64,000 nucleotides of DNA from Saccostrea echinata (lineage: Eukaryota): NCBI RefSeq assembly GCF_033153115.1, contig NW_026889794.1:1674001-1738000 (forward strand). Direction: 5' to 3'. A program made the position numbers and the translations under genes. The notes under the pieces were generated by a model. The model searched no databases. It worked only from the letters and a program-made list of their open reading frames with translations, and had not been told where the DNA came from. Below, in pieces: positions 37,437 to 45,695 of the stretch (its first letter is position 1; the number at the start of each line of letters is the position of its first letter).

Positions 37437-40400
37437 TTAGCTGTGTTCTGGTGACTTTGGTTTGATGAACCTCCCCTGGACAAATATCCTAGGGACACAC
37501 AAGTCCTCCTTTTTATTGACTGTGTCTCTTTGTATGTACTCACACTGACTCAATGTCATATCAAATCCAACACTCTTCACAAGATCTAACAATTTGTCTG
37601 AAAAAAAAATTATTTTCTATCATTTCAAACATAACTTTCTTAAAAACATCCTTGCCCCCTGACAAAAATTGAATAAACTTGAATTTGTACTGCATGGGCA
37701 TACATAAGATTAATGATAGCACTGTAAAATTCATTGGATTCTTCATAGACACAGCTACATTCCTATGTAAACTTAGAACCTTTAATAGACTCAAGCCTAG
37801 TCTGAGACCTTGACTGGAACAATTGAATTCTACATTAGATGGGGTGAATGCATAATAATTTGACTTTTTGATGCCCTCCTGCTGTTAATGACGACATTTT
37901 TTTGGTGGTACATTTGTATGAAAAACTTTGGCCCCCTTCTGAAACCCTACAGGAAAACATGGATCTAGACTATGACTACTTGTTCTTTTGAATGCTTGCA
38001 TATCAATTCAATTAATTTTGGTACTTCTGTCCTTAAAGTTACATAGTGAGTCGATATCATATGTTTCTTTTAAGATAATTGTATCGTAAAGCTAAAGATT
38101 TATGAGAAATATAAATAAAGTGAAGTTTTGAGATCTCAACTGCACGGTAAAAGCAAGAAAAGACTGCAAAATGTAAATGCCAGAAAAAGAAAAGTTGTTC
38201 TAAGGCGTGGTTGTTATCGTCAATGTCTACAATGTCAAGGTCATGTGTCTTATTCTTAGCGTGAAACTTGTAAACAACATTGAATTAGAGCAATCAAAAG
38301 TAAGGAATAAGTTCTGATCATCTTTTTTGAAGATCATATCAAAATCCTCGGTCATCCGACATTTATATCTATGGAATTGACACCATGGTAACTTCTTCAA
38401 CTTTTCTGTGCATGCGTACCTTAAAGAGGAAGAAGTGAAGCAATATTTTCGTGTTGGGGCAAACTAAAATTATTTTTACTTATATTTTCCTCCTTAAAAG
38501 TAGATTTTTCAGATTCTGAATCCTGTAATTTTCTGAAACCTGATACTTTTAAGAATTGAATAAAATTTGCATGTGTCTTGCAAAAATTCTACTTTTGTCA
38601 ATTTTCCCGTTCGTCCGTCACAGTGTCTCTTTAAAAAGAGGATTAAAAATCATCCTATCCTATTTTACAGGTGGTGTTTACCATTCATTATTTATCTCCT
38701 GCAGAGTTTTGGAAGAAGTCAACAAGAAACCCATGAGTCACAATGCTCACCTTAATGATCTTGGCCCTGCTGTTTTTCATCAGATTTTAAAGTTTTTTTC
38801 TACTCATTATTTCCATGAAAAAGTTTAACCCCAATTCCAAGAAGTCTCCTTGACATGGGGAATCTTGCACTATGTGAGGGTGCTTGCTTATTAATATTAC
38901 TTATTGTGACACTGCTATTCTTGAAAAAGAGATTTTTACATTTATATTCCCAAGAAAAACTTTGATCCCCTTTTGTGGCACCACACTACTCCCAAGGCAG
39001 AAATACAGAATTTACACATCTCAGCAAGCTTTCACCTAAATTTCATCTCTTCTCATCTGCCGGTTCTTTAGATGAAGATTTTTAAATGACCCAATCCTAT
39101 TTTTGCCTTTTCTTGCTGATCTTCCACCAAAGGATGCTTTGTGCCAACTTCAGTTTAAACTGACCCAGTTGTTCTTGAGAAGAAATTAAAAATGTGTTAA
39201 GTTTACATACATACAGACAGCTAGACAGACAGATGCCAGAGATGGCTCCGGTGAGCTAAAAATGTGAAAAGCTAGAATAAGTAAAATTGATTTTACAGCT
39301 CTCAGGCCAATTTTCCTAAAAACAGATGTGGGTGGAAGGGGTTTTTTTTTTTACCTTTTTATGGGCAGTAATTACATATGTAGATGTGGGAGGCAGTTTT
39401 TATTCCAGAATTTTTTATGAAATAACAATGAAAATCCTTTCCCTATAAGTGTACTGGGGTCCTACTGTAAATATATTCAACATCTCACAAAATTACCAAG
39501 TATATGCATATTTTTCATTTTATTGAACAGAGTGTCCATGTTGAATGACTGTCCATGTTTATACAAAATGGATACCAGAAACAAAAATGAAGTGCAAAAC
39601 TATGGATAATGAGTCCGGAATTTTTTTCCCTGGATGGGTCTCCCCAATACCAAATTTTTATTTTATTGAAAATGTGATAAAAATTGTAATGCTGCTACCT
39701 TAAAACTGATGTGCAAGGGCTCAAAAAAACCATAATTTCAATTTTATATAGCCTTAACAGACAGGCAAAGACACATAGTCAACAAATTTTTTATCAGAAA
39801 AGCTTATTTGAATCTCTCTCTCATTTTCACTATATACCGGTATTTCCTTTGAACTCATCATGATTTTTACCTGTAGAGAAATAGTAAGCCCTGGTTCCAT
39901 CTTGTCTGACATAGAAGTTTTCCGACAGCTTGTGACCTGACGCGAACCTCAGCATGGCATAATCATAGAGACCATAGTCCCTGAATAACAGATTGCCTCC
40001 AGGCTTCATCACCTGAAAATGAATATTTCTTAATAAATCAAAATCCTCTATTTCACTGATTTTTTTTTCTAAATGCCTTGGATCCATCTTTTTTAACTGT
40101 TATGAATATCTGTCACCTTTACAATATATCAAACACTTTTGAACTTATAGTTCCCTGCCTTTTGGGATATTAAAAGTAAAACTAAAGACATAAATAACAG
40201 ATTTGCAATGCTGCCATTAACATGTTTTTTTCACTAAAATTTATGTGAAGGCCCCGACACTACCCTAAAAATTACTCTTTATTAGTTGTGTATTTCTGTC
40301 TAAAGTTAAATCAATTTAACTTTATCATATATAAGTGTACAGTTGCAAAGTTTTAAACTGATTAATTCATAAATTGATTATTAAAAGCAAACTAGGCAAA

Positions 40401-40679: not shown

Positions 40680-42726
40680 TTCCTTATGCCAAATGTTAAC
40701 TTAGGGTAATGGAACACAATGAGCTGTTCCTAGCACCTCGGGAAATATATTCTGAATACTGATATATTTCTAATAAGGTATTAAATTAAAATAACTGTAT
40801 ATTATTCCATTTTATAAAAGTTATATTAGAAATTGAGGCTCATCTCAGCAATTTATTGGTGTATTATATTCATAGATATTTATAACCTTCATGATATTGG
40901 ATAAAGCTGCCTCCATCTTGTCTGGATGGATAGCTGACAGGACGAAGATCATAGACACCACATCTACCGAGTCTTGAGGAATGGTCACACTCAGATCATC
41001 CTTTGTGATGTCACACTGGAAGGCAGAGCATCGAGTCGAGTCATACTCAGGATTGTCCTACATGAAATGTAATCCCACACATTTTAATCTTATATTTCAG
41101 AACTAAACACATGCATGTTTAAATGTACAGTTTTTTTGTTTTGTTTTGTTTTTTGTTTTTTTTTTTTTTTGGGGGGGGGGGTGTTTTTTGTTTTTTTGTT
41201 TTTGTTTTTTGGTTTTCTTTTAAATGAAACAATGTTAACATGAGCATTTTGCAAACTTTCACCAAAGATACACAAAAGAAAGATAACTCTTGCAGTTTTT
41301 CAGAAGTTTCTTTTTCACAGAGAGTTATCTCTCTTTGTTCATAAACCTCAGACTTTCAAAAGAGAATATTGTACAAACATCAAATCATATCAAATTTATG
41401 TCTATGAAATAAAAATGAAAGTTATTAAATAAGCATACATCAAGAGTAAAATTTCTACTTACATACCTGGAAAAACTTCATTAAATAGAATAAGTGATGA
41501 CAGAGAGAATAGGGATAAATAGTAGATCTATTTACTCTTATTTTGTATTTCAAAGTTGTTTACGTACAATATATAAATAGTACATGTTTGGGAGGGTAAA
41601 CAGTTGAAATTTACACTCCGAGAAAAAACTATAACTATCATCTTACACGTCAGCTTTATATATATGCATCTGACATTATCATTATTTGTTACCCAAGTGT
41701 GTTGCTAATGCTGAGGGAAACATTGAAAATTGGTAATGCTTCTAAACCATACGCATTCCCCATCTTAATTTGTAAATAAGAAATATAAATACTATCAACA
41801 TAACATTTATAGTGTAGTAGATATAAATTTTTATATTTACTAATTAAGCTGGGGAATGCCTATGTTCTAAACCAATCAGATTTCAGTATTTAACAAGAAA
41901 GTATCATAATTAAAAATACCTTCACAAACTGTACAGCTCTAGGAGAGAAATCACAGGCATAGAAGAAGAGAGATTTGTCCTCTTGTAGCAGTGGCCAGAT
42001 AAAGTTCCCCACCCCACAGCCTACCTCCAGTATTATCCTCTGACCTGTCTGTAAAAAGCAATACTGAGAATTATTGGATAAACAAAAACTCATTTCTCTG
42101 GATAGCATATTATTTGCAAGTATAAATATCATGGGTATCTGATTCTGCTGAATACACTAAAATCTGCATGATTATGCTATTGCACAAATACCATGATACT
42201 TTTTAAAATTTTGTGAATAAAAGAATTGAACATTGATATCAATAGTAATTTCTATGGAAAATTTCATATGTTACTCAACTCTGATACATGTAGCTATGAA
42301 TATTTTTGCCTTATATTTGCCTTATACCTCTGTTTCCAAGGCGCATAGATCATCAAACTCCCGCTTTGTCCAATGGCGGTCCTTAAAGAACTTTGTGGTG
42401 TTTCTCTTATAAAATAGATCCCAGTTTTTCTGAGCTTCTTTCTCAAGCTTGTTCTGTTTAAAATCGGACACACAGGTTACATCTTTTTTCAGTTTAGCAA
42501 TTTCCTCCGGTGTGAGAGTTCTAGCAGAGTGACCAAAATTCTCCTCGCAGTCATTGCTGGCTAACATCTCAGATTTGTCAACTTCTACTTTTGAGTCTGT
42601 GACTGTCATTTTCTTTAAATGAACATCTACAGAATCTGCTAATGAGTCGTCTACACTTTGCTCTGAATTATGAGATGAATTTTCATTTAACTCATTTCTT
42701 TCTCCTAAATTACACTTGTTATCCAT
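37437..42726 (-). CDS. METTL6: tRNA N3-methylcytidine (m3C) methyltransferase METTL6, about 333 aa; exons 42726-42328, 42048-41920, 41057-40887, 40012-39871, 37597-37437
   Basis: [36 protein letters not shown] (SAM motif I), [62 protein letters not shown]. All introns GT-AG with consistent phases. The ORF-track start at 42744 is a TTG; first ATG is 42726. Confidence 0.95.
38720..39262 (+). mobile_element. Helentron-associated (HINE-like) element in METTL6 intron
   Basis: 5' AACAAGAAACCCATGAGTCACAATGCTCACC; 3' (ACAG)n microsatellite then GGTGAGCTAAAAA (sub-TIR GCTCACC/GGTGAGC). Confidence 0.7.
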
Positions 42727-42801
42727 TTTATTTTGAGATGACAATTTTCCACAATTTTTTTTTCCTAGCCAAAAAATCTAAAAATATACTTGATCATTCA
42801 A

Positions 42802-43299
42802 TTAATGCCCAACATGAAGTAAAGGGACACAACTGCATCCAGTTACTTTGTTAAATTCCTTCAAGATCAATGATTCCTTTGCAAACATTTGCTCATACTG
42901 TTCCTTTGTTTCATGATCATAGCCAATCAGATGAGAGATACCATGGGTTACCATGACAGGGAGAACATTCTGTATCTTCTGGTTGTTATGACGACACTGT
43001 CGGTTAATGTACGGAATTCCCAGGTAGATATCCCCCAAGTCTAACACACCCTGAGTTGGAGCGGGGGGCAATTTTCCTGGTACAAGATCCTCGTAAAAAG
43101 GAAATGCTAAAACGTCTGTTGGTTGTCTTTTTCCTCTGTATTGAGTGTTTATTCTGGTAATCTCCCTGTCGTTTACACAGGTTACAGATAGGTCATAAGA
43201 TTCAACTCCAAACAGCTTACGCAGGAGGTTAATTTGGGATTTCAACAGGTGTGTGTCAAGGGAAACTACTCTTTGCAAATTTTCAAACAGCACAGACAT
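42802..43299 (-). CDS. YBEY: Endoribonuclease YbeY (UPF0054), 165 aa, intronless CDS
   Basis: N-x-x-YR..PTDVLAFP, LGDIYLG and the metal-binding HGISHLIGYDH motif; N-terminus MSVLFENLQR resembles metazoan YBEY. Acceptor TATTGCAG| at 43323 just upstream. Confidence 0.95.
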   Translation of the reverse strand: MSVLFENLQRVVSLDTHLLKSQINLLRKLFGVESYDLSVTCVNDREITRINTQYRGKRQPTDVLAFPFYEDLVPGKLPPAPTQGVLDLGDIYLGIPYINRQCRHNNQKIQNVLPVMVTHGISHLIGYDHETKEQYEQMFAKESLILKEFNKVTGCSCVPLLHVGH

Positions 43300-44009
43300 A
43301 CTCTTTCAAAATTTTTCATCACCTGCAATAGTTTAAATAAAATATGTATACATCTTTTCATTTATTACTATGATTTCAAATGTGAGATCAACATAAAGAA
43401 ATATCCTTTTCTGAAGAACTCTAAAATGGAGATTTACAATGTTTTATGCAGAAGTTATAATAGCTATTATATTCAGCAAAGAATATTCTCAAAGTCTATA
43501 TTCTCTACATAGAGAAACAGGCAATATAATTGATATTAGCTCAGGGGCTCCGAAAATACTGATGGTCAGATAATTTTTACTATTGACTGGCAAAGAGTTT
43601 TCCCACATTTCCCATCAAAATGTTTGGATAATAATCTGGCGATAGGCTTGCCTTACGCTTTTCCTGCTCAGATACACAGCTGGCTCTAGCTGTTACAACC
43701 ATTGTTTACATTATTTGAGGTGTCCTTGTGACATCACAATCACATGCGCTGACCCTCTGGTGAATACAGCTTTAAATTCAGTGAATATGTAATGTTAGTA
43801 CATTTATAAACCATTTATACAGCAAACTCGTGCCTATATTCACCAATATAAGTTCAATAACCCTGTATTTTCACATCCTTCCAATGACCCTACCAAGAGT
43901 TATTTGCTTAATGAGGTTTTCATTGTTAATTGCTAAACTTTTACTAGATTATACTTTTGTCTATAATAATTAATAATTTTAATTTTGTGTGAAAATCGAC
44001 ACATCTTAC

Positions 44010-44100
44010 CTAGCTACCACTACCCATCAAACATGTAAACAAGTGTCGTTGAGTGGTTGACAGATGACATTTTTTGTTTACAACATATTTATAGTCTTCT
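44010..44100 (-). promoter_or_regulatory. Candidate shared non-coding first exon/promoter of YBEY and METTL6
   Basis: Strong donor TAG|GTAAGA at 44010/44009; TGTTTACA motifs at about 44033-44040 and 44075-44082. A second candidate donor GC|GTAAGG lies at about 43657. Confidence 0.45.
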
Positions 44101-44802
44101 CCATTATGATTATTCAAAAAATGTAATCTCACATTTTCTAAACATAGATTAGCAAAAGAAATGGTGGACTGTTGGCTTATTATTGTTTTAATAAAGTTTT
44201 TTCGTACCTTGACAGTAGTTTTTCAATTTTAAACCTAATAGTTAAACCTAATAAGTAATGTACTGGTATACGTATGCATAATGATGGCCAGTGAAAAAAT
44301 CATGAAAAATACCTTAATTAATTTGAGATGTAATAATTGATTTGCAATACATGTATTATGTGTATTGATATATATTTGTACTTTTTTTTTAAAATGAAGA
44401 CTCGCAACCATCAAATTTTGAAAATTTTGAGATGATTTACAATAACGTCATATATTAATAGTTTATCCTTAGAACTTAAAGTTACAGGGAGATAAATAAT
44501 GGGGATAAATAGAAGTTTACCAAAAGATTCTTGTCAAAAGTGGTTAAAATTCAGTTTATAAAATAACATTTTAATTAGGGCCTAACTCGTAACAAGGGAC
44601 AAGCTGTAAGGAGAAAAAAAACTTACAAGTTGTTGAGTGTAACAGCTTTTCTTTTCGTCATGCTTACAGGAATGAAAATGAAAGTAAAAATAAATGCTAA
44701 AACCTACTGTGGAATGTCCGAGATAAAAATGTAAACAGTGGCCTGGTGTTAATATTTTATGTTTCTATAACCGCTGTTTTAGAGGTATCTTTTCGAAAAA
44801 TG

Positions 44803-44823
44803 TGGGTGGCCCTTAAAAGGGCC
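44803..44823 (-). terminator. Histone mRNA 3' stem-loop plus ACCCA
   Basis: GGCCCT-TTTA-AGGGCC (44823-44808), then ACCCA and a purine-rich downstream element (CGAAAAGA, about 44795-44788). Confidence 0.93.
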
Positions 44824-44849
44824 GTGGGGTTTATTCAGTGAACAGCTGC

Positions 44850-45659
44850 TCACTTAGCCTTTGCTGCTTTCTTTGCCTTCCTTGGGGAGCTGGGCCTTTT
44901 CCTTGCCTTGGATTTGGTTTTCTTAGGCGACTTCCTCGCTGCTTTGGGCTTCTTGGCTGCCTTGGCTTTCTTTGGTGACTTGGCCTTTCTTGCTTTCTTT
45001 ACTTTTTTGGCTGCTGCTTTCTTTGCCTTGGGTTTCTTTGCCTTTGGCTTCTTTGCTTTCTTGGGCTTCTTCGCTGCCGCCTTCTTCTTTGGCTTTTTAG
45101 CTGCCTTCTTCTTCTTGGGCGTTGCTGCAACTTTTCCTACTCTGAAACGTCCGCTTGCACCGTGGGCACTGGATCCTTTAGGCCGAACTAGGGCTCCTGA
45201 CTTAAGACCCTTAGCGAACGCGGCTTTCATTGCTGAAGACAGGTGTGTTGCACTCACCGATTTGTTGTTAGCCAAGATGTATTTTCTGATGGACTGGGCT
45301 GAGGATCCTTTGCGGTCCTTCATGGCAGTAATGGCCGCACACACCATGTTGAGAGTTGTTGGATGGGCCGCTTTCTTGGATGCTGCTCTGGGTTTTGATG
45401 CCTTCTTCTTTGGTGACTTCCTGGCCTTCTTAGCTTTTCTTGGGGATCCACTTCGACTGCGGCTTCTACTTCTGCTTCGGCTGCGACTGCGGCTACGGCT
45501 CCTGGACTTGGTCATCTTGGGGGCAGCTGGCTTTGCTGGTGCTGGAGATTTCTTCGCTACAGCTTTCTTAGGTGCTGCCTTCTTTGGAGATCGACTTCGG
45601 CTTCGGCTCCTAGACCTTGACTTAGACCGGGAACGGGAACGAGATCGGGATTTCGCCAT
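44850..45659 (-). CDS. Sperm-type protamine-like histone H1 (PL-I-like), 269 aa, intronless
   Basis: Two (RS)n blocks, H1/H5 winged-helix domain (HPTTLNMVCAAITAMKDRKGSSAQSIRKYI..GASGRFRV) and K/A/P-rich tail with SPKK motifs; histone stem-loop downstream. Sperm specificity is inferred from family resemblance. Confidence 0.9.
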   Translation of the reverse strand: MAKSRSRSRSRSKSRSRSRSRSRSPKKAAPKKAVAKKSPAPAKPAAPKMTKSRSRSRSRSRSRSRSRSRSGSPRKAKKARKSPKKKASKPRAASKKAAHPTTLNMVCAAITAMKDRKGSSAQSIRKYILANNKSVSATHLSSAMKAAFAKGLKSGALVRPKGSSAHGASGRFRVGKVAATPKKKKAAKKPKKKAAAKKPKKAKKPKAKKPKAKKAAAKKVKKARKAKSPKKAKAAKKPKAARKSPKKTKSKARKRPSSPRKAKKAAKAK

Positions 45660-45695
45660 ATTCTTACGAACTGACTGGTACTCTTGCTGGAACAA

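What the first reader, a model, noticed from the sequence alone, without database searches (positions are those of the whole stretch)
42328..44060. YBEY and METTL6 appear to form one transcription unit (bicistronic or alternative-acceptor locus)
Seen: a complete intronless YBEY ORF ends 75 nt before the METTL6 ATG on the same strand, leaving little room for a separate promoter. There is an acceptor before YBEY (43323), candidate acceptors in the spacer (TATATTTTTAG| at 42778; TTGGCTAG| about 42765) and an upstream non-coding donor (44010). Inference: one promoter gives either a YBEY(+METTL6) mRNA or a YBEY-skipped METTL6 mRNA; YBEY may have retroposed into the METTL6 5' UTR. Established: YBEY acts in mitochondrial small-subunit assembly with reported effects on mt-tRNA-Ser, and METTL6 makes m3C32 on tRNA-Ser, so this would be an operon-like coupling of two RNA-maturation enzymes. 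I do not know of a description of this linkage, but could not search.
Basis: partly seen in the sequence, partly recalled or inferred. Interest (0 to 1): 0.85.

Follow-up and report, generated by a model that had tools for sequence, protein, structure and literature searches.

The report
Oyster YBEY sits in METTL6's leader
In oysters the only copy of the mitochondrial ribosome-assembly gene YBEY is an intronless gene lying 75 bases in front of the tRNA methyltransferase gene METTL6. This tight pairing is conserved across oyster genera and probably reflects a shared promoter, but no RNA reads could be examined, so one shared messenger RNA remains unproven.

Summary
An intact 165-aa YbeY ORF (43299-42802, minus strand) ends 75 nt before the METTL6 start codon (42726).

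New here:
- The genome is, by inference, Saccostrea echinata. Both genes exist as separate public protein models.
- YBEY is single-copy and intronless in oysters, whereas Mytilus YBEY has introns.
- The two genes share contigs in Saccostrea (two species), Magallana/Crassostrea and Ostrea. They are not adjacent in Mytilus, Patella, Haliotis rubra or Bradybaena.
- Thirteen AUGs precede the METTL6 start on any YBEY-containing mRNA, so leaky scanning is excluded.
- AATAAA sits directly before the METTL6 ATG, so a YBEY-only mRNA would end inside METTL6 exon 1.

The proposed functional coupling through tRNA-Ser is weak. In human cells YBEY acts on mitochondrial tRNA-Ser(AGY) and METTL6 on nuclear-encoded tRNA-Ser.

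Best reading (about 0.5): a retro-type YBEY captured the METTL6 promoter and leader, and METTL6 is made from an alternatively processed or internally started mRNA. This is a new member of a known kind, of moderate interest.

The scan has noted five other candidate bicistronic loci on other DNA of this genome, but not this one.

The parts
44088..44093 (-). TATAAA, a candidate TATA box about 30 nt upstream of the presumed start of the non-coding exon
   Evidence: Motif listing. This is a consensus match in 28% GC DNA and is weak on its own.
44010..44063 (-). Candidate non-coding first exon. The 5' end is a guess. The 3' end is the donor TAG|GTAAGA, with exon end at 44010.
   Evidence: Sequence. 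AGGTAAG is unique in the 1483 nt upstream region (expected 0.07-0.11). The exon holds two short uORFs. Its use is not shown.
43323..44009 (-). Candidate 687-nt intron between the non-coding exon and the YBEY exon
   Evidence: GT at 44009-44008 and AG at 43324-43323 behind an AT/pyrimidine-rich tract. No Rfam family matches inside it.
43300..43322 (-). 23-nt leader of the YBEY exon, with an in-frame TGA three codons before the ATG
   Evidence: Read. The YBEY start context is AAGAGTATGT, with A at -3.
42802..43299 (-). YBEY coding sequence: 165 codons plus TAA, intronless, the only copy in the genome
   Evidence: PF02130, E 5.7e-30; one match in G000; bacterial YbeY structures at E 2e-15 to 1e-10, His triad intact; 68-79% identity to YBEY of other oyster lineages.
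42727..42801 (-). 75-nt spacer. It holds two AG acceptor-like sites (exon starts 42777 and 42764), an A9 run, and AATAAA at 42732-42727 abutting the METTL6 ATG.
   Evidence: YBEY and METTL6 are in the same frame, separated by TAA and one TAG. The spacer's METTL6-frame translation (..IFWLGKKN..) resembles the frame upstream of METTL6 in a Crassostrea genomic ORF (P0137..EFWLRIKN..).
42328..42726 (-). METTL6 coding exon 1 (133 codons), with donor GAG|GTATAA
   Evidence: 100% identity to P0493 residues 1-133. The start Met, and the reading frame despite indels, are conserved in Saccostrea, Ostrea and Crassostrea proteins.
41920..42048 (-). METTL6 exon 2, carrying the SAM-binding motif LEVGCGVGN
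40887..41057 (-). METTL6 exon 3
39871..40012 (-). METTL6 exon 4
37437..37597 (-). METTL6 exon 5 with stop TAA. The five exons sum to 1002 nt, which is 333 aa plus the stop.
   Evidence: ATTAAA signals lie 35, 450 and 680 nt after the stop.
44783..44828 (-). Histone 3' stem-loop that ends the upstream H1-like gene. It marks the upstream limit of the region that can hold the YBEY/METTL6 promoter.
   Evidence: Rfam RF00032, 40 bits against a gathering score of 34, E 3.9e-09. The H1 ORF is at 45695-44850 with PF00538.

Best explanation
In the oyster lineage a processed (intron-free) copy of YBEY came to lie in the 5' leader of METTL6, and the original intron-containing gene was lost. Since then both genes have depended on one promoter region. 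That region lies between the histone H1 3' end (44783) and the YBEY exon. It probably includes a short non-coding exon ending at 44010 that is spliced to the acceptor at 43323. YBEY is translated as the 5'-proximal ORF. The 596 nt between that acceptor and the METTL6 start carry 13 AUGs, so METTL6 protein is probably not made by scanning through YBEY. It more likely comes from a second mRNA form of the same unit. That form would either join the leader exon to an acceptor in the spacer (exon start 42777 or 42764) or begin at a start site inside or just after YBEY. Mutual dependence on the shared leader and promoter would explain why the 65-75 nt spacing has been kept across oyster genera. Shown here: the anatomy, the identities, single copy, intron loss, conservation of adjacency, and exclusion of leaky scanning. 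Inferred: the shared promoter, use of the splice sites, and retroposition as the mechanism.
For: 1. Anatomy: a 75-nt spacer, with AATAAA touching the METTL6 ATG. Any YBEY mRNA must therefore extend into METTL6 exon 1, and any METTL6 mRNA must start in or upstream of YBEY or the spacer.
2. YBEY is intact, single-copy and conserved at 68-79% identity between oyster genera, so it is a working gene and needs a promoter.
3. Oysters have an intronless coding sequence. In Mytilus, genomic ORFs leave the mRNA sequence after FPFIE (codon 70), and one gene model skips residues 71-113.
4. Adjacency is conserved. The window's YBEY and METTL6 both sit on a contig of 6,931,385 bp. In S. cucullata the pairs sit on contigs of 138,677 and 90,545 bp. 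In C. angulata XP_052712055 and XP_052712054 are both on a 61,934,658 bp contig. Ostrea-type Logan contigs of exactly 3082 and 3074 bp carry both YBEY and the METTL6 exon-1 ORF.
5. The genes are not adjacent in Mytilus edulis, M. coruscus and M. galloprovincialis (different scaffolds), Patella vulgata and P. caerulea (different chromosomes), Haliotis rubra (different scaffolds), or Bradybaena (locus tags about 790 apart).
6. The only AGGTAAG in the 1.48 kb upstream region is at 44011 (expected 0.07-0.11), followed 687 nt later by a good acceptor 23 nt before the YBEY ATG.
7. Hints of joint transcripts in Crassostrea: spliced full-length METTL6 contigs reach 2.1-2.8 kb, against 1.1-1.8 kb in the non-oyster bivalves listed; YBEY-bearing contigs fall in the same size class; and N-terminally extended YBEY ORFs are filed in the METTL6 90% cluster.
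Against: No RNA evidence of any kind could be obtained. The contig-length similarity is not significant by itself, because near-equal lengths also occur where both ORFs cannot fit (1352 versus 1355 nt). A long METTL6 3' UTR could equally explain 2.45-kb contigs. Public annotation treats the two as separate genes. Splice-like and TATA-like motifs are common in 28-30% GC DNA. No target-site duplication was found (p = 0.6). The A9 run is only mildly unusual, at 25 such runs per strand in 64 kb. Intron loss plus local rearrangement could produce the same picture without retroposition. Adjacency in other oysters is inferred from shared contigs, not from read DNA. Only one Crassostrea ORF (P0137) speaks to spacer length there.
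Confidence: 0.5

Rival explanations
1. There are two separate, physically overlapping transcription units. YBEY has its own promoter and is polyadenylated by the AATAAA at 42732, with cleavage inside METTL6 exon 1. METTL6 is transcribed from a compact promoter embedded in the 3' part of the YBEY coding sequence or spacer, giving a 5' UTR under 75 nt. The tight spacing is kept because each gene's signals lie inside the other.
For: Both genes are separate public gene models. AATAAA lies directly before the METTL6 ATG. A TATA-like TATATTTTT sits about 65 nt before the METTL6 ATG. Crassostrea METTL6 cDNA contigs of 1.74-1.81 kb exist, and one of them (P0485) carries only 9 extra codons upstream of the start.
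Against: A working promoter inside 75 nt plus coding sequence is unusual in a 923-Mb genome with large intergenic space. The motifs are weak. The short contigs may simply be assembly breaks at a branch point.
Confidence: 0.3
2. The locus makes an obligate bicistronic mRNA. A single mature mRNA carries YBEY and METTL6, and METTL6 is translated from it by reinitiation or internal ribosome entry promoted by the A-rich spacer.
For: The spacer is short, A-rich in Saccostrea, and apparently A-rich in Crassostrea (..RIKNKQT.. upstream of the Met in P0137). The METTL6 start context is strong (AAAATGG). The size class of the Crassostrea contigs fits.
Against: ORF1 has 165 codons and 13 AUGs lie upstream (expected 11.4), so leaky scanning is excluded and reinitiation would be inefficient. 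No IRES evidence exists. The back-translation of the Crassostrea spacer is only an inference.
Confidence: 0.12
3. The YBEY ORF is a silent or decaying retrocopy that happens to lie in the METTL6 leader.
For: The ORF is intronless. No Ostrea YBEY protein from NCBI was found among the hits.
Against: It is the only YBEY in the genome. The full-length ORF and the His triad are intact in four oyster lineages, with no frameshifts, at 68-79% identity. YBEY is essential for mitochondrial translation in human cells (PMC8191802, PMC7515705).
Confidence: 0.02

Closest known systems
Animal dicistronic genes without trans-splicing, such as Drosophila stoned A/B and Adh-Adhr, and human RPP14-HTD2 (own knowledge, not checked here)
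   Same: Two unrelated conserved ORFs lie on one strand with a very short spacer. They share an upstream promoter and are conserved over long times. RPP14-HTD2 also pairs an RNA-processing protein with a mitochondrial enzyme.
   Different: In those cases a joint mRNA has been demonstrated. Here it has not. This pair (YBEY-METTL6) is not described in any paper of the searched library.
Green-algal bicistronic loci (PMC7896298, PMC11892635; titles and abstracts seen)
   Same: They are conserved two-ORF loci in a eukaryote without spliced-leader resolution.
   Different: According to the PMC11892635 title, ORF2 in the algae is translated by leaky scanning. Here ORF1 and its leader carry 13 AUGs with no depletion, so that mechanism is excluded.
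Retrogenes that land in the 5' UTR or an intron of a host gene and borrow its promoter (own knowledge)
   Same: The coding sequence is intronless while a relative (Mytilus) has introns. The position is immediately in front of the host start codon. An A-rich stretch follows the short 3' trailer.
   Different: The parent gene is gone, so the retro-type copy is now the sole functional gene. No target-site duplication is detectable. The event is old, predating the split of Ostrea, Crassostrea and Saccostrea.
Spliced-leader operons of nematodes, tunicates and flatworms
   Same: The intercistronic distance is short (about 100 nt) and an AG acceptor sits in the spacer.
   Different: Spliced-leader trans-splicing is not known in molluscs to my knowledge. 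No spliced-leader RNA could be sought without reads. The literature search was not followed up.

Membership tests
YbeY endoribonuclease (Pfam PF02130 / UPF0054) | Sequence match to the family profile above the curated cut-off | tested here: met
   104.3 bits against a cut-off of 25, E 5.7e-30. Solved bacterial YbeY chains match at E 2e-15 to 1e-10.
YbeY endoribonuclease (Pfam PF02130 / UPF0054) | Metal-binding H-x3-H-x5-H motif | tested here: met
   HGISHLIGYDH aligns with HGIVHLLGYDH of 1oz9. The motif is conserved in all mollusc orthologues aligned.
YbeY endoribonuclease (Pfam PF02130 / UPF0054) | Mitochondrial location and a role in small-subunit assembly, as in human cells | not testable with these tools
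   Known for human YBEY (PMC8191802, PMC7515705). Inferred for the oyster.
METTL6 (tRNA m3C32 methyltransferase) | Orthology-level similarity to METTL6 rather than other methyltransferases | tested here: met
   P0493 maps to the window's five exons and matches human METTL6 chains 7f1e and 8p7b at E 6e-113. The next family scores 3.6e-12.
METTL6 (tRNA m3C32 methyltransferase) | Class I SAM-binding motif | tested here: met
   LEVGCGVGN lies in exon 2. Oyster METTL6 proteins carry Methyltransf_12/25/11 domains (precomputed Pfam column).
Eukaryotic bicistronic mRNA | Two conserved non-overlapping ORFs on one strand with a short spacer | tested here: met
   75 nt in the window. About 65 nt is inferred for a Crassostrea genomic ORF.
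Eukaryotic bicistronic mRNA | One mature transcript that spans both ORFs | not testable with these tools
Only indirect hints exist from contig sizes and cluster membership.
Eukaryotic bicistronic mRNA | No transcript end or start between the ORFs | tested here: inconclusive
   AATAAA at 42732-42727 would place cleavage inside METTL6 exon 1, not in the spacer. A weak TATA-like element is present in the spacer.
Eukaryotic bicistronic mRNA | A workable route to translate ORF2 (leaky scanning needs AUG depletion) | tested here: not met
   There are 13 AUGs upstream of the METTL6 start against 11.4 +/- 3.1 expected. Reinitiation or internal entry were not testable.
Processed retrogene | Loss of all introns relative to orthologues | tested here: met
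   The window holds a continuous 165-codon ORF, and other oysters carry full-length ORFs on genomic contigs of 5-10 kb. Mytilus genomic ORFs break after codon 70, and one model skips residues 71-113.
Processed retrogene | Poly(A) remnant and target-site duplication | tested here: inconclusive
   An A9 run lies 38 nt after the stop, where about 0.03 such runs are expected per 75 nt. Flank similarity is no better than shuffles, p = 0.6.
Spliced-leader operon | Spliced-leader RNA and trans-spliced downstream cistron | not testable with these tools
   No reads were available. No spliced leader is known in molluscs (own knowledge; the papers were not read).

The most novel reading that the evidence does not exclude
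Oysters have kept, for roughly 100 million years (age from my own knowledge), a true two-protein mRNA. Their only YBEY gene, needed for mitochondrial ribosome assembly, is the first cistron. METTL6, the tRNA-Ser m3C32 methyltransferase, is translated downstream by reinitiation or internal entry at an A-rich 65-75 nt spacer. This would tie the output of a mitochondrial translation factor stoichiometrically to that of a cytosolic one.
Probability: 0.12. Interest if true: 0.6.

Novelty: new member of a known kind. Interest (0 to 1): 0.4.

Why it matters
If a shared unit is confirmed, this would be a dated and phylogenetically bracketed case: absent in mussels and gastropods, present in three oyster subfamilies. 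It would show an essential gene being replaced by its own retro-type copy that survives by borrowing another housekeeping gene's promoter and leader. It would also be a handy model for how animals without spliced-leader trans-splicing translate or bypass a long upstream cistron. It also has a practical side for annotation. No NCBI YBEY protein was found for Ostrea, although the ORF is present next to METTL6, so such hidden first cistrons may be under-annotated. I consider the suggested functional link between the two enzymes through tRNA-Ser weak, and it should not be the reason for interest.

Tried and rejected

2. I tried to fetch related oyster DNA from JGI metagenome contigs. The search for related loci with P0004 and a degenerate YBEY pattern both came back empty. 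No nucleotide comparison of spacer or splice sites across oysters was possible.

3. I looked for YBEY-METTL6 fusion proteins. METTL6-exon-1 hits with N-terminal extensions (P0214, P0269, P0165 and others) have no YbeY domain.

4. I used equal 'longest contig' values as proof of joint cDNA. This works for Ostrea, where 3082 and 3074 match exactly, but those are genomic contigs carrying only the exon-1 ORF. For Crassostrea the values are only near-equal (2456 against 2449-2460), and I judged that not significant.

5. The 179-aa Crassostrea YBEY variants turned out to be stop-codon read-through alleles (C-terminal +10 aa), not spliced 5' extensions.

6. The 30-aa N-terminal extension of some Crassostrea YBEY ORFs shows no similarity to the window's upstream region.

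7. Leaky scanning is rejected on the AUG count.

8. Target-site duplication is rejected, p = 0.6.

9. The CpG observed/expected profile gave no promoter signal.

10. The bacterial promoter and terminator scan is irrelevant here. Its only useful result was the hairpin later confirmed as a histone stem-loop.

11. RefSeq accession-number spacing is not a reliable proxy for gene order. In S. cucullata a pair on one 139-kb contig differs by 185. I therefore based non-adjacency only on different scaffolds or chromosomes and on locus tags.

Exon 1 was searched by reference, and the public protein P0493 was used for the rest.
Full report
**What is there**

On the minus strand a 165-codon ORF runs from 43299 to 42802, with TAA at 42804-42802.
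- It is a clear YbeY: Pfam PF02130 at 104 bits, E 5.7e-30.
- It matches solved bacterial YbeY chains at E 2e-15 to 1e-10, with the HGISHLIGYDH histidine triad aligned.

Seventy-five nucleotides further on (42801-42727) comes an ATG at 42726. This ATG opens a 133-codon exon ending at a GT donor (exon end 42328).
- The public protein P0493 (METTL6-like, Saccostrea echinata, 333 aa) maps at 100% identity over its exonic parts onto five exons. These are 42726-42328, 42048-41920, 41057-40887, 40012-39871 and 37597-37437, summing to 1002 nt.
- P0493 matches human METTL6 structures at E 6e-113.
- P0493 and the window's own YbeY protein are both recorded on a contig of 6,931,385 bp. By inference the window is therefore Saccostrea echinata.
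- I did not build or send a joined spliced model. Exon 1 was searched by reference, and the public protein stood in for the rest.

All of the sites exist at the coordinates given.
- The donor is TAG|GTAAGA, with its exon end at 44010.
- The acceptor ..TATTGCAG| lies at 43323, 23 nt before the YBEY ATG.
- Two AGs lie in the spacer, giving exon starts at 42777 and 42764.

AGGTAAG occurs only once in the 1483 nt between the upstream gene's end and YBEY, against 0.07-0.11 expected. The donor is therefore a reasonable candidate. None of these sites is shown to be used.

The upstream neighbour is an H1-like histone gene that ends with a canonical histone 3' stem-loop at 44828-44783 (Rfam RF00032, 40 bits). 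Any promoter for YBEY must therefore lie in the 1.48 kb between 44783 and 43300.

**Constraints from the sequence alone**

1. AATAAA lies at 42732-42727, directly before the METTL6 ATG. It is the only canonical signal after YBEY. A YBEY-only mRNA would therefore be cleaved inside METTL6 exon 1.
2. A METTL6 mRNA must begin within the 75-nt spacer, within YBEY, or upstream of it. The two genes cannot be transcriptionally independent in the ordinary sense. They either overlap or share a unit.
3. An mRNA that contains YBEY has 13 AUGs between the 43322 exon start and the METTL6 ATG, against 11.4 +/- 3.1 expected. Leaky scanning is reported for green-algal bicistrons (PMC11892635, seen) and is excluded here. 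METTL6 would need reinitiation after a 165-codon ORF, internal entry, or a different mRNA.
4. If the 44010 exon were joined to either spacer acceptor, the METTL6 leader would be 92-105 nt with only two tiny uORFs.
5. The start Met of METTL6 and the reading frame of its fast-evolving first 40 residues are kept in Saccostrea, Ostrea and Crassostrea proteins. The annotated ATG, and hence the 75-nt spacing, is therefore probably real.

**Copy number and gene structure**

A six-frame search of the whole 923-Mb assembly finds exactly one YBEY.

Oyster YBEY proteins of 165-169 aa are called as single ORFs on genomic contigs of 5-10 kb in several lineages.

In Mytilus the picture differs.
- Three independent genomic ORFs follow the mRNA only up to ..AFPFIE (codon 70). 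They then read VRVRIC, the translation expected of a GTAAG-type intron start.
- One M. galloprovincialis gene model lacks residues 71-113.

Mytilus YBEY therefore has at least one intron, and probably two, within the coding sequence. Oyster YBEY has none.

Classical retroposition marks are weak. An A9 run lies 38 nt after the stop, where about 0.03 such runs are expected per 75 nt. No target-site duplication is detectable, p = 0.6.

**Conservation of the linkage**

I used only the contig sizes, accession numbers and names that the protein collection reports.

| Lineage | YBEY and METTL6 records |
|---|---|
| S. cucullata | Together on contigs of 138,677 bp and, for a second copy, 90,545 bp |
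| Crassostrea/Magallana angulata | XP_052712055 (YBEY) and XP_052712054 (METTL6), both on the 61,934,658-bp record |
| Ostrea-type | Logan contigs of exactly 3082 bp (16 and 17 contigs) and 3074 bp carry both YBEY (P0003/P0106) and the 142-aa METTL6 exon-1 ORF (P0490/P0492); the latter cluster at 90% with O. edulis METTL6 |

A Crassostrea genomic ORF (P0137) stays open for 21 codons upstream of the METTL6 Met. It resembles the Saccostrea spacer read in the METTL6 frame (..EFWLRIKN.. against ..IFWLGKKN..). This suggests a spacer of about 65 nt there. That figure is an inference from protein strings.

The two genes are not adjacent in the following species.
- Mytilus edulis, M. coruscus and M. 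galloprovincialis: different scaffolds, although the genes share a chromosome in the chromosome-level assemblies.
- Haliotis rubra: different scaffolds.
- Patella vulgata and P. caerulea: different chromosomes.
- Bradybaena similaris: the same chromosome, but locus tags 01059 and 01850.

The tight pair is thus a derived feature of oysters that predates the split of Ostrea, Crassostrea and Saccostrea. From my own knowledge that split is on the order of 100 million years old. I did not test the date.

**Is it one transcription unit?**

I could not test this directly.
- Two scans of metagenome contigs for related oyster DNA were empty.

The following circumstantial hints remain.
- Crassostrea contigs that encode the fully spliced 329-aa METTL6, and so derive from RNA, reach 2.07-2.46 kb and in one case 2.83 kb. 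The METTL6 cDNA contigs listed for Tegillarca, Argopecten and other bivalves reach only 1.1-1.8 kb.
- YBEY-bearing Crassostrea contigs include 2456, 2436, 2262 and 2050 nt.
- Four YBEY ORFs with a 30-aa N-terminal extension (P0465, P0470, P0472, P0473) are filed in the 90%-identity cluster of Crassostrea METTL6. Sequence similarity cannot explain this. A hidden member carrying both ORFs might.
- No NCBI YBEY protein turned up for the Ostrea type, although the ORF is there. One explanation is that the ORF lies inside an annotated METTL6 leader.

None of this is proof. Near-equal contig lengths also occur where both ORFs cannot fit (1352 against 1355 nt). A long 3' UTR would explain 2.45 kb equally well.

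**Function**

[quoted passage not shown] METTL6 is described in the context of tRNA-Ser m3C32 (PMC11233606).

The two enzymes work in different compartments, and mitochondrial m3C is made by METTL8 (PMC8980813). The shared 'tRNA-Ser' label is therefore not evidence of a common pathway. No paper in the searched library mentions both genes.

**Verdict**

| Reading | Confidence |
|---|---|
| A retro-type YBEY captured the METTL6 promoter and leader; both genes now depend on one upstream region; METTL6 protein comes from an alternatively spliced or internally started form | 0.5 |
| Two overlapping but separately started units | 0.3 |
| An obligate bicistronic mRNA with unconventional translation of METTL6 | 0.12 |
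| A silent retrocopy | 0.02 |

This is a new member of a known kind (animal dicistronic or host-promoter retrogene loci). It is well bracketed phylogenetically, moderately interesting, and easy to settle with public oyster RNA data.

The scan's notes list five other candidate bicistronic loci in this same genome. I did not test them. If several hold up, they would suggest that such units are not rare in oysters.

Noticed in passing
window 44783-45695 (-): An H1-type linker histone gene (PF00538, E 1.7e-22) has long (SR)n/(RS)n runs at its N-terminus and ends with a canonical histone 3' stem-loop (RF00032, 40 bits). An RS-repeat H1 with a replication-dependent 3' end may be a sperm or nuclear basic protein type.
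   Followed up: partly
window 41744-41868, both strands (METTL6 intron 2): A 125-nt palindromic hairpin matches Rfam MIR9563 on both strands at 39 and 35 bits, far below the gathering score of 90. It is probably a MITE-like inverted repeat rather than a miRNA.
   Followed up: no
proteins P0465, P0470, P0472, P0473 (Crassostrea, Logan contigs): These YBEY ORFs carry a 30-aa N-terminal extension (starting MKLFSLRQ...). They are filed in the 90% cluster of METTL6 (representative P0365), not in the YBEY cluster. This is unexplained. It possibly points to a cluster member that carries both ORFs.
   Followed up: partly
proteins P0116, P0118 compared with P0005 (Crassostrea YBEY): There is a stop-codon polymorphism. 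Some alleles read 10 codons further (..GHYLKE-WTIWNNLFIL) into the spacer, so the YBEY C-terminus is variable. Saccostrea stops 4 codons earlier than Crassostrea and Ostrea.
   Followed up: no
Ostrea-type proteins P0003/P0106 (Logan only): No NCBI-sourced YBEY protein was found for the Ostrea type, although the ORF lies on the same contigs as METTL6 exon 1. The gene may be missing from that public annotation.
   Followed up: no
Mytilus, Haliotis, Bradybaena proteins: YBEY and METTL6 lie on the same chromosome-scale record in Mytilus (4 species), Haliotis asinina, H. cracherodii and Bradybaena, although they are not adjacent. This hints at an old shared linkage group, from which the oyster pair could have formed by a local move.
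   Followed up: partly
window 41090-41275: A long A/T-rich low-complexity stretch in METTL6 intron 2 gives K-rich and F-rich pseudo-ORFs on both strands.
   Followed up: no
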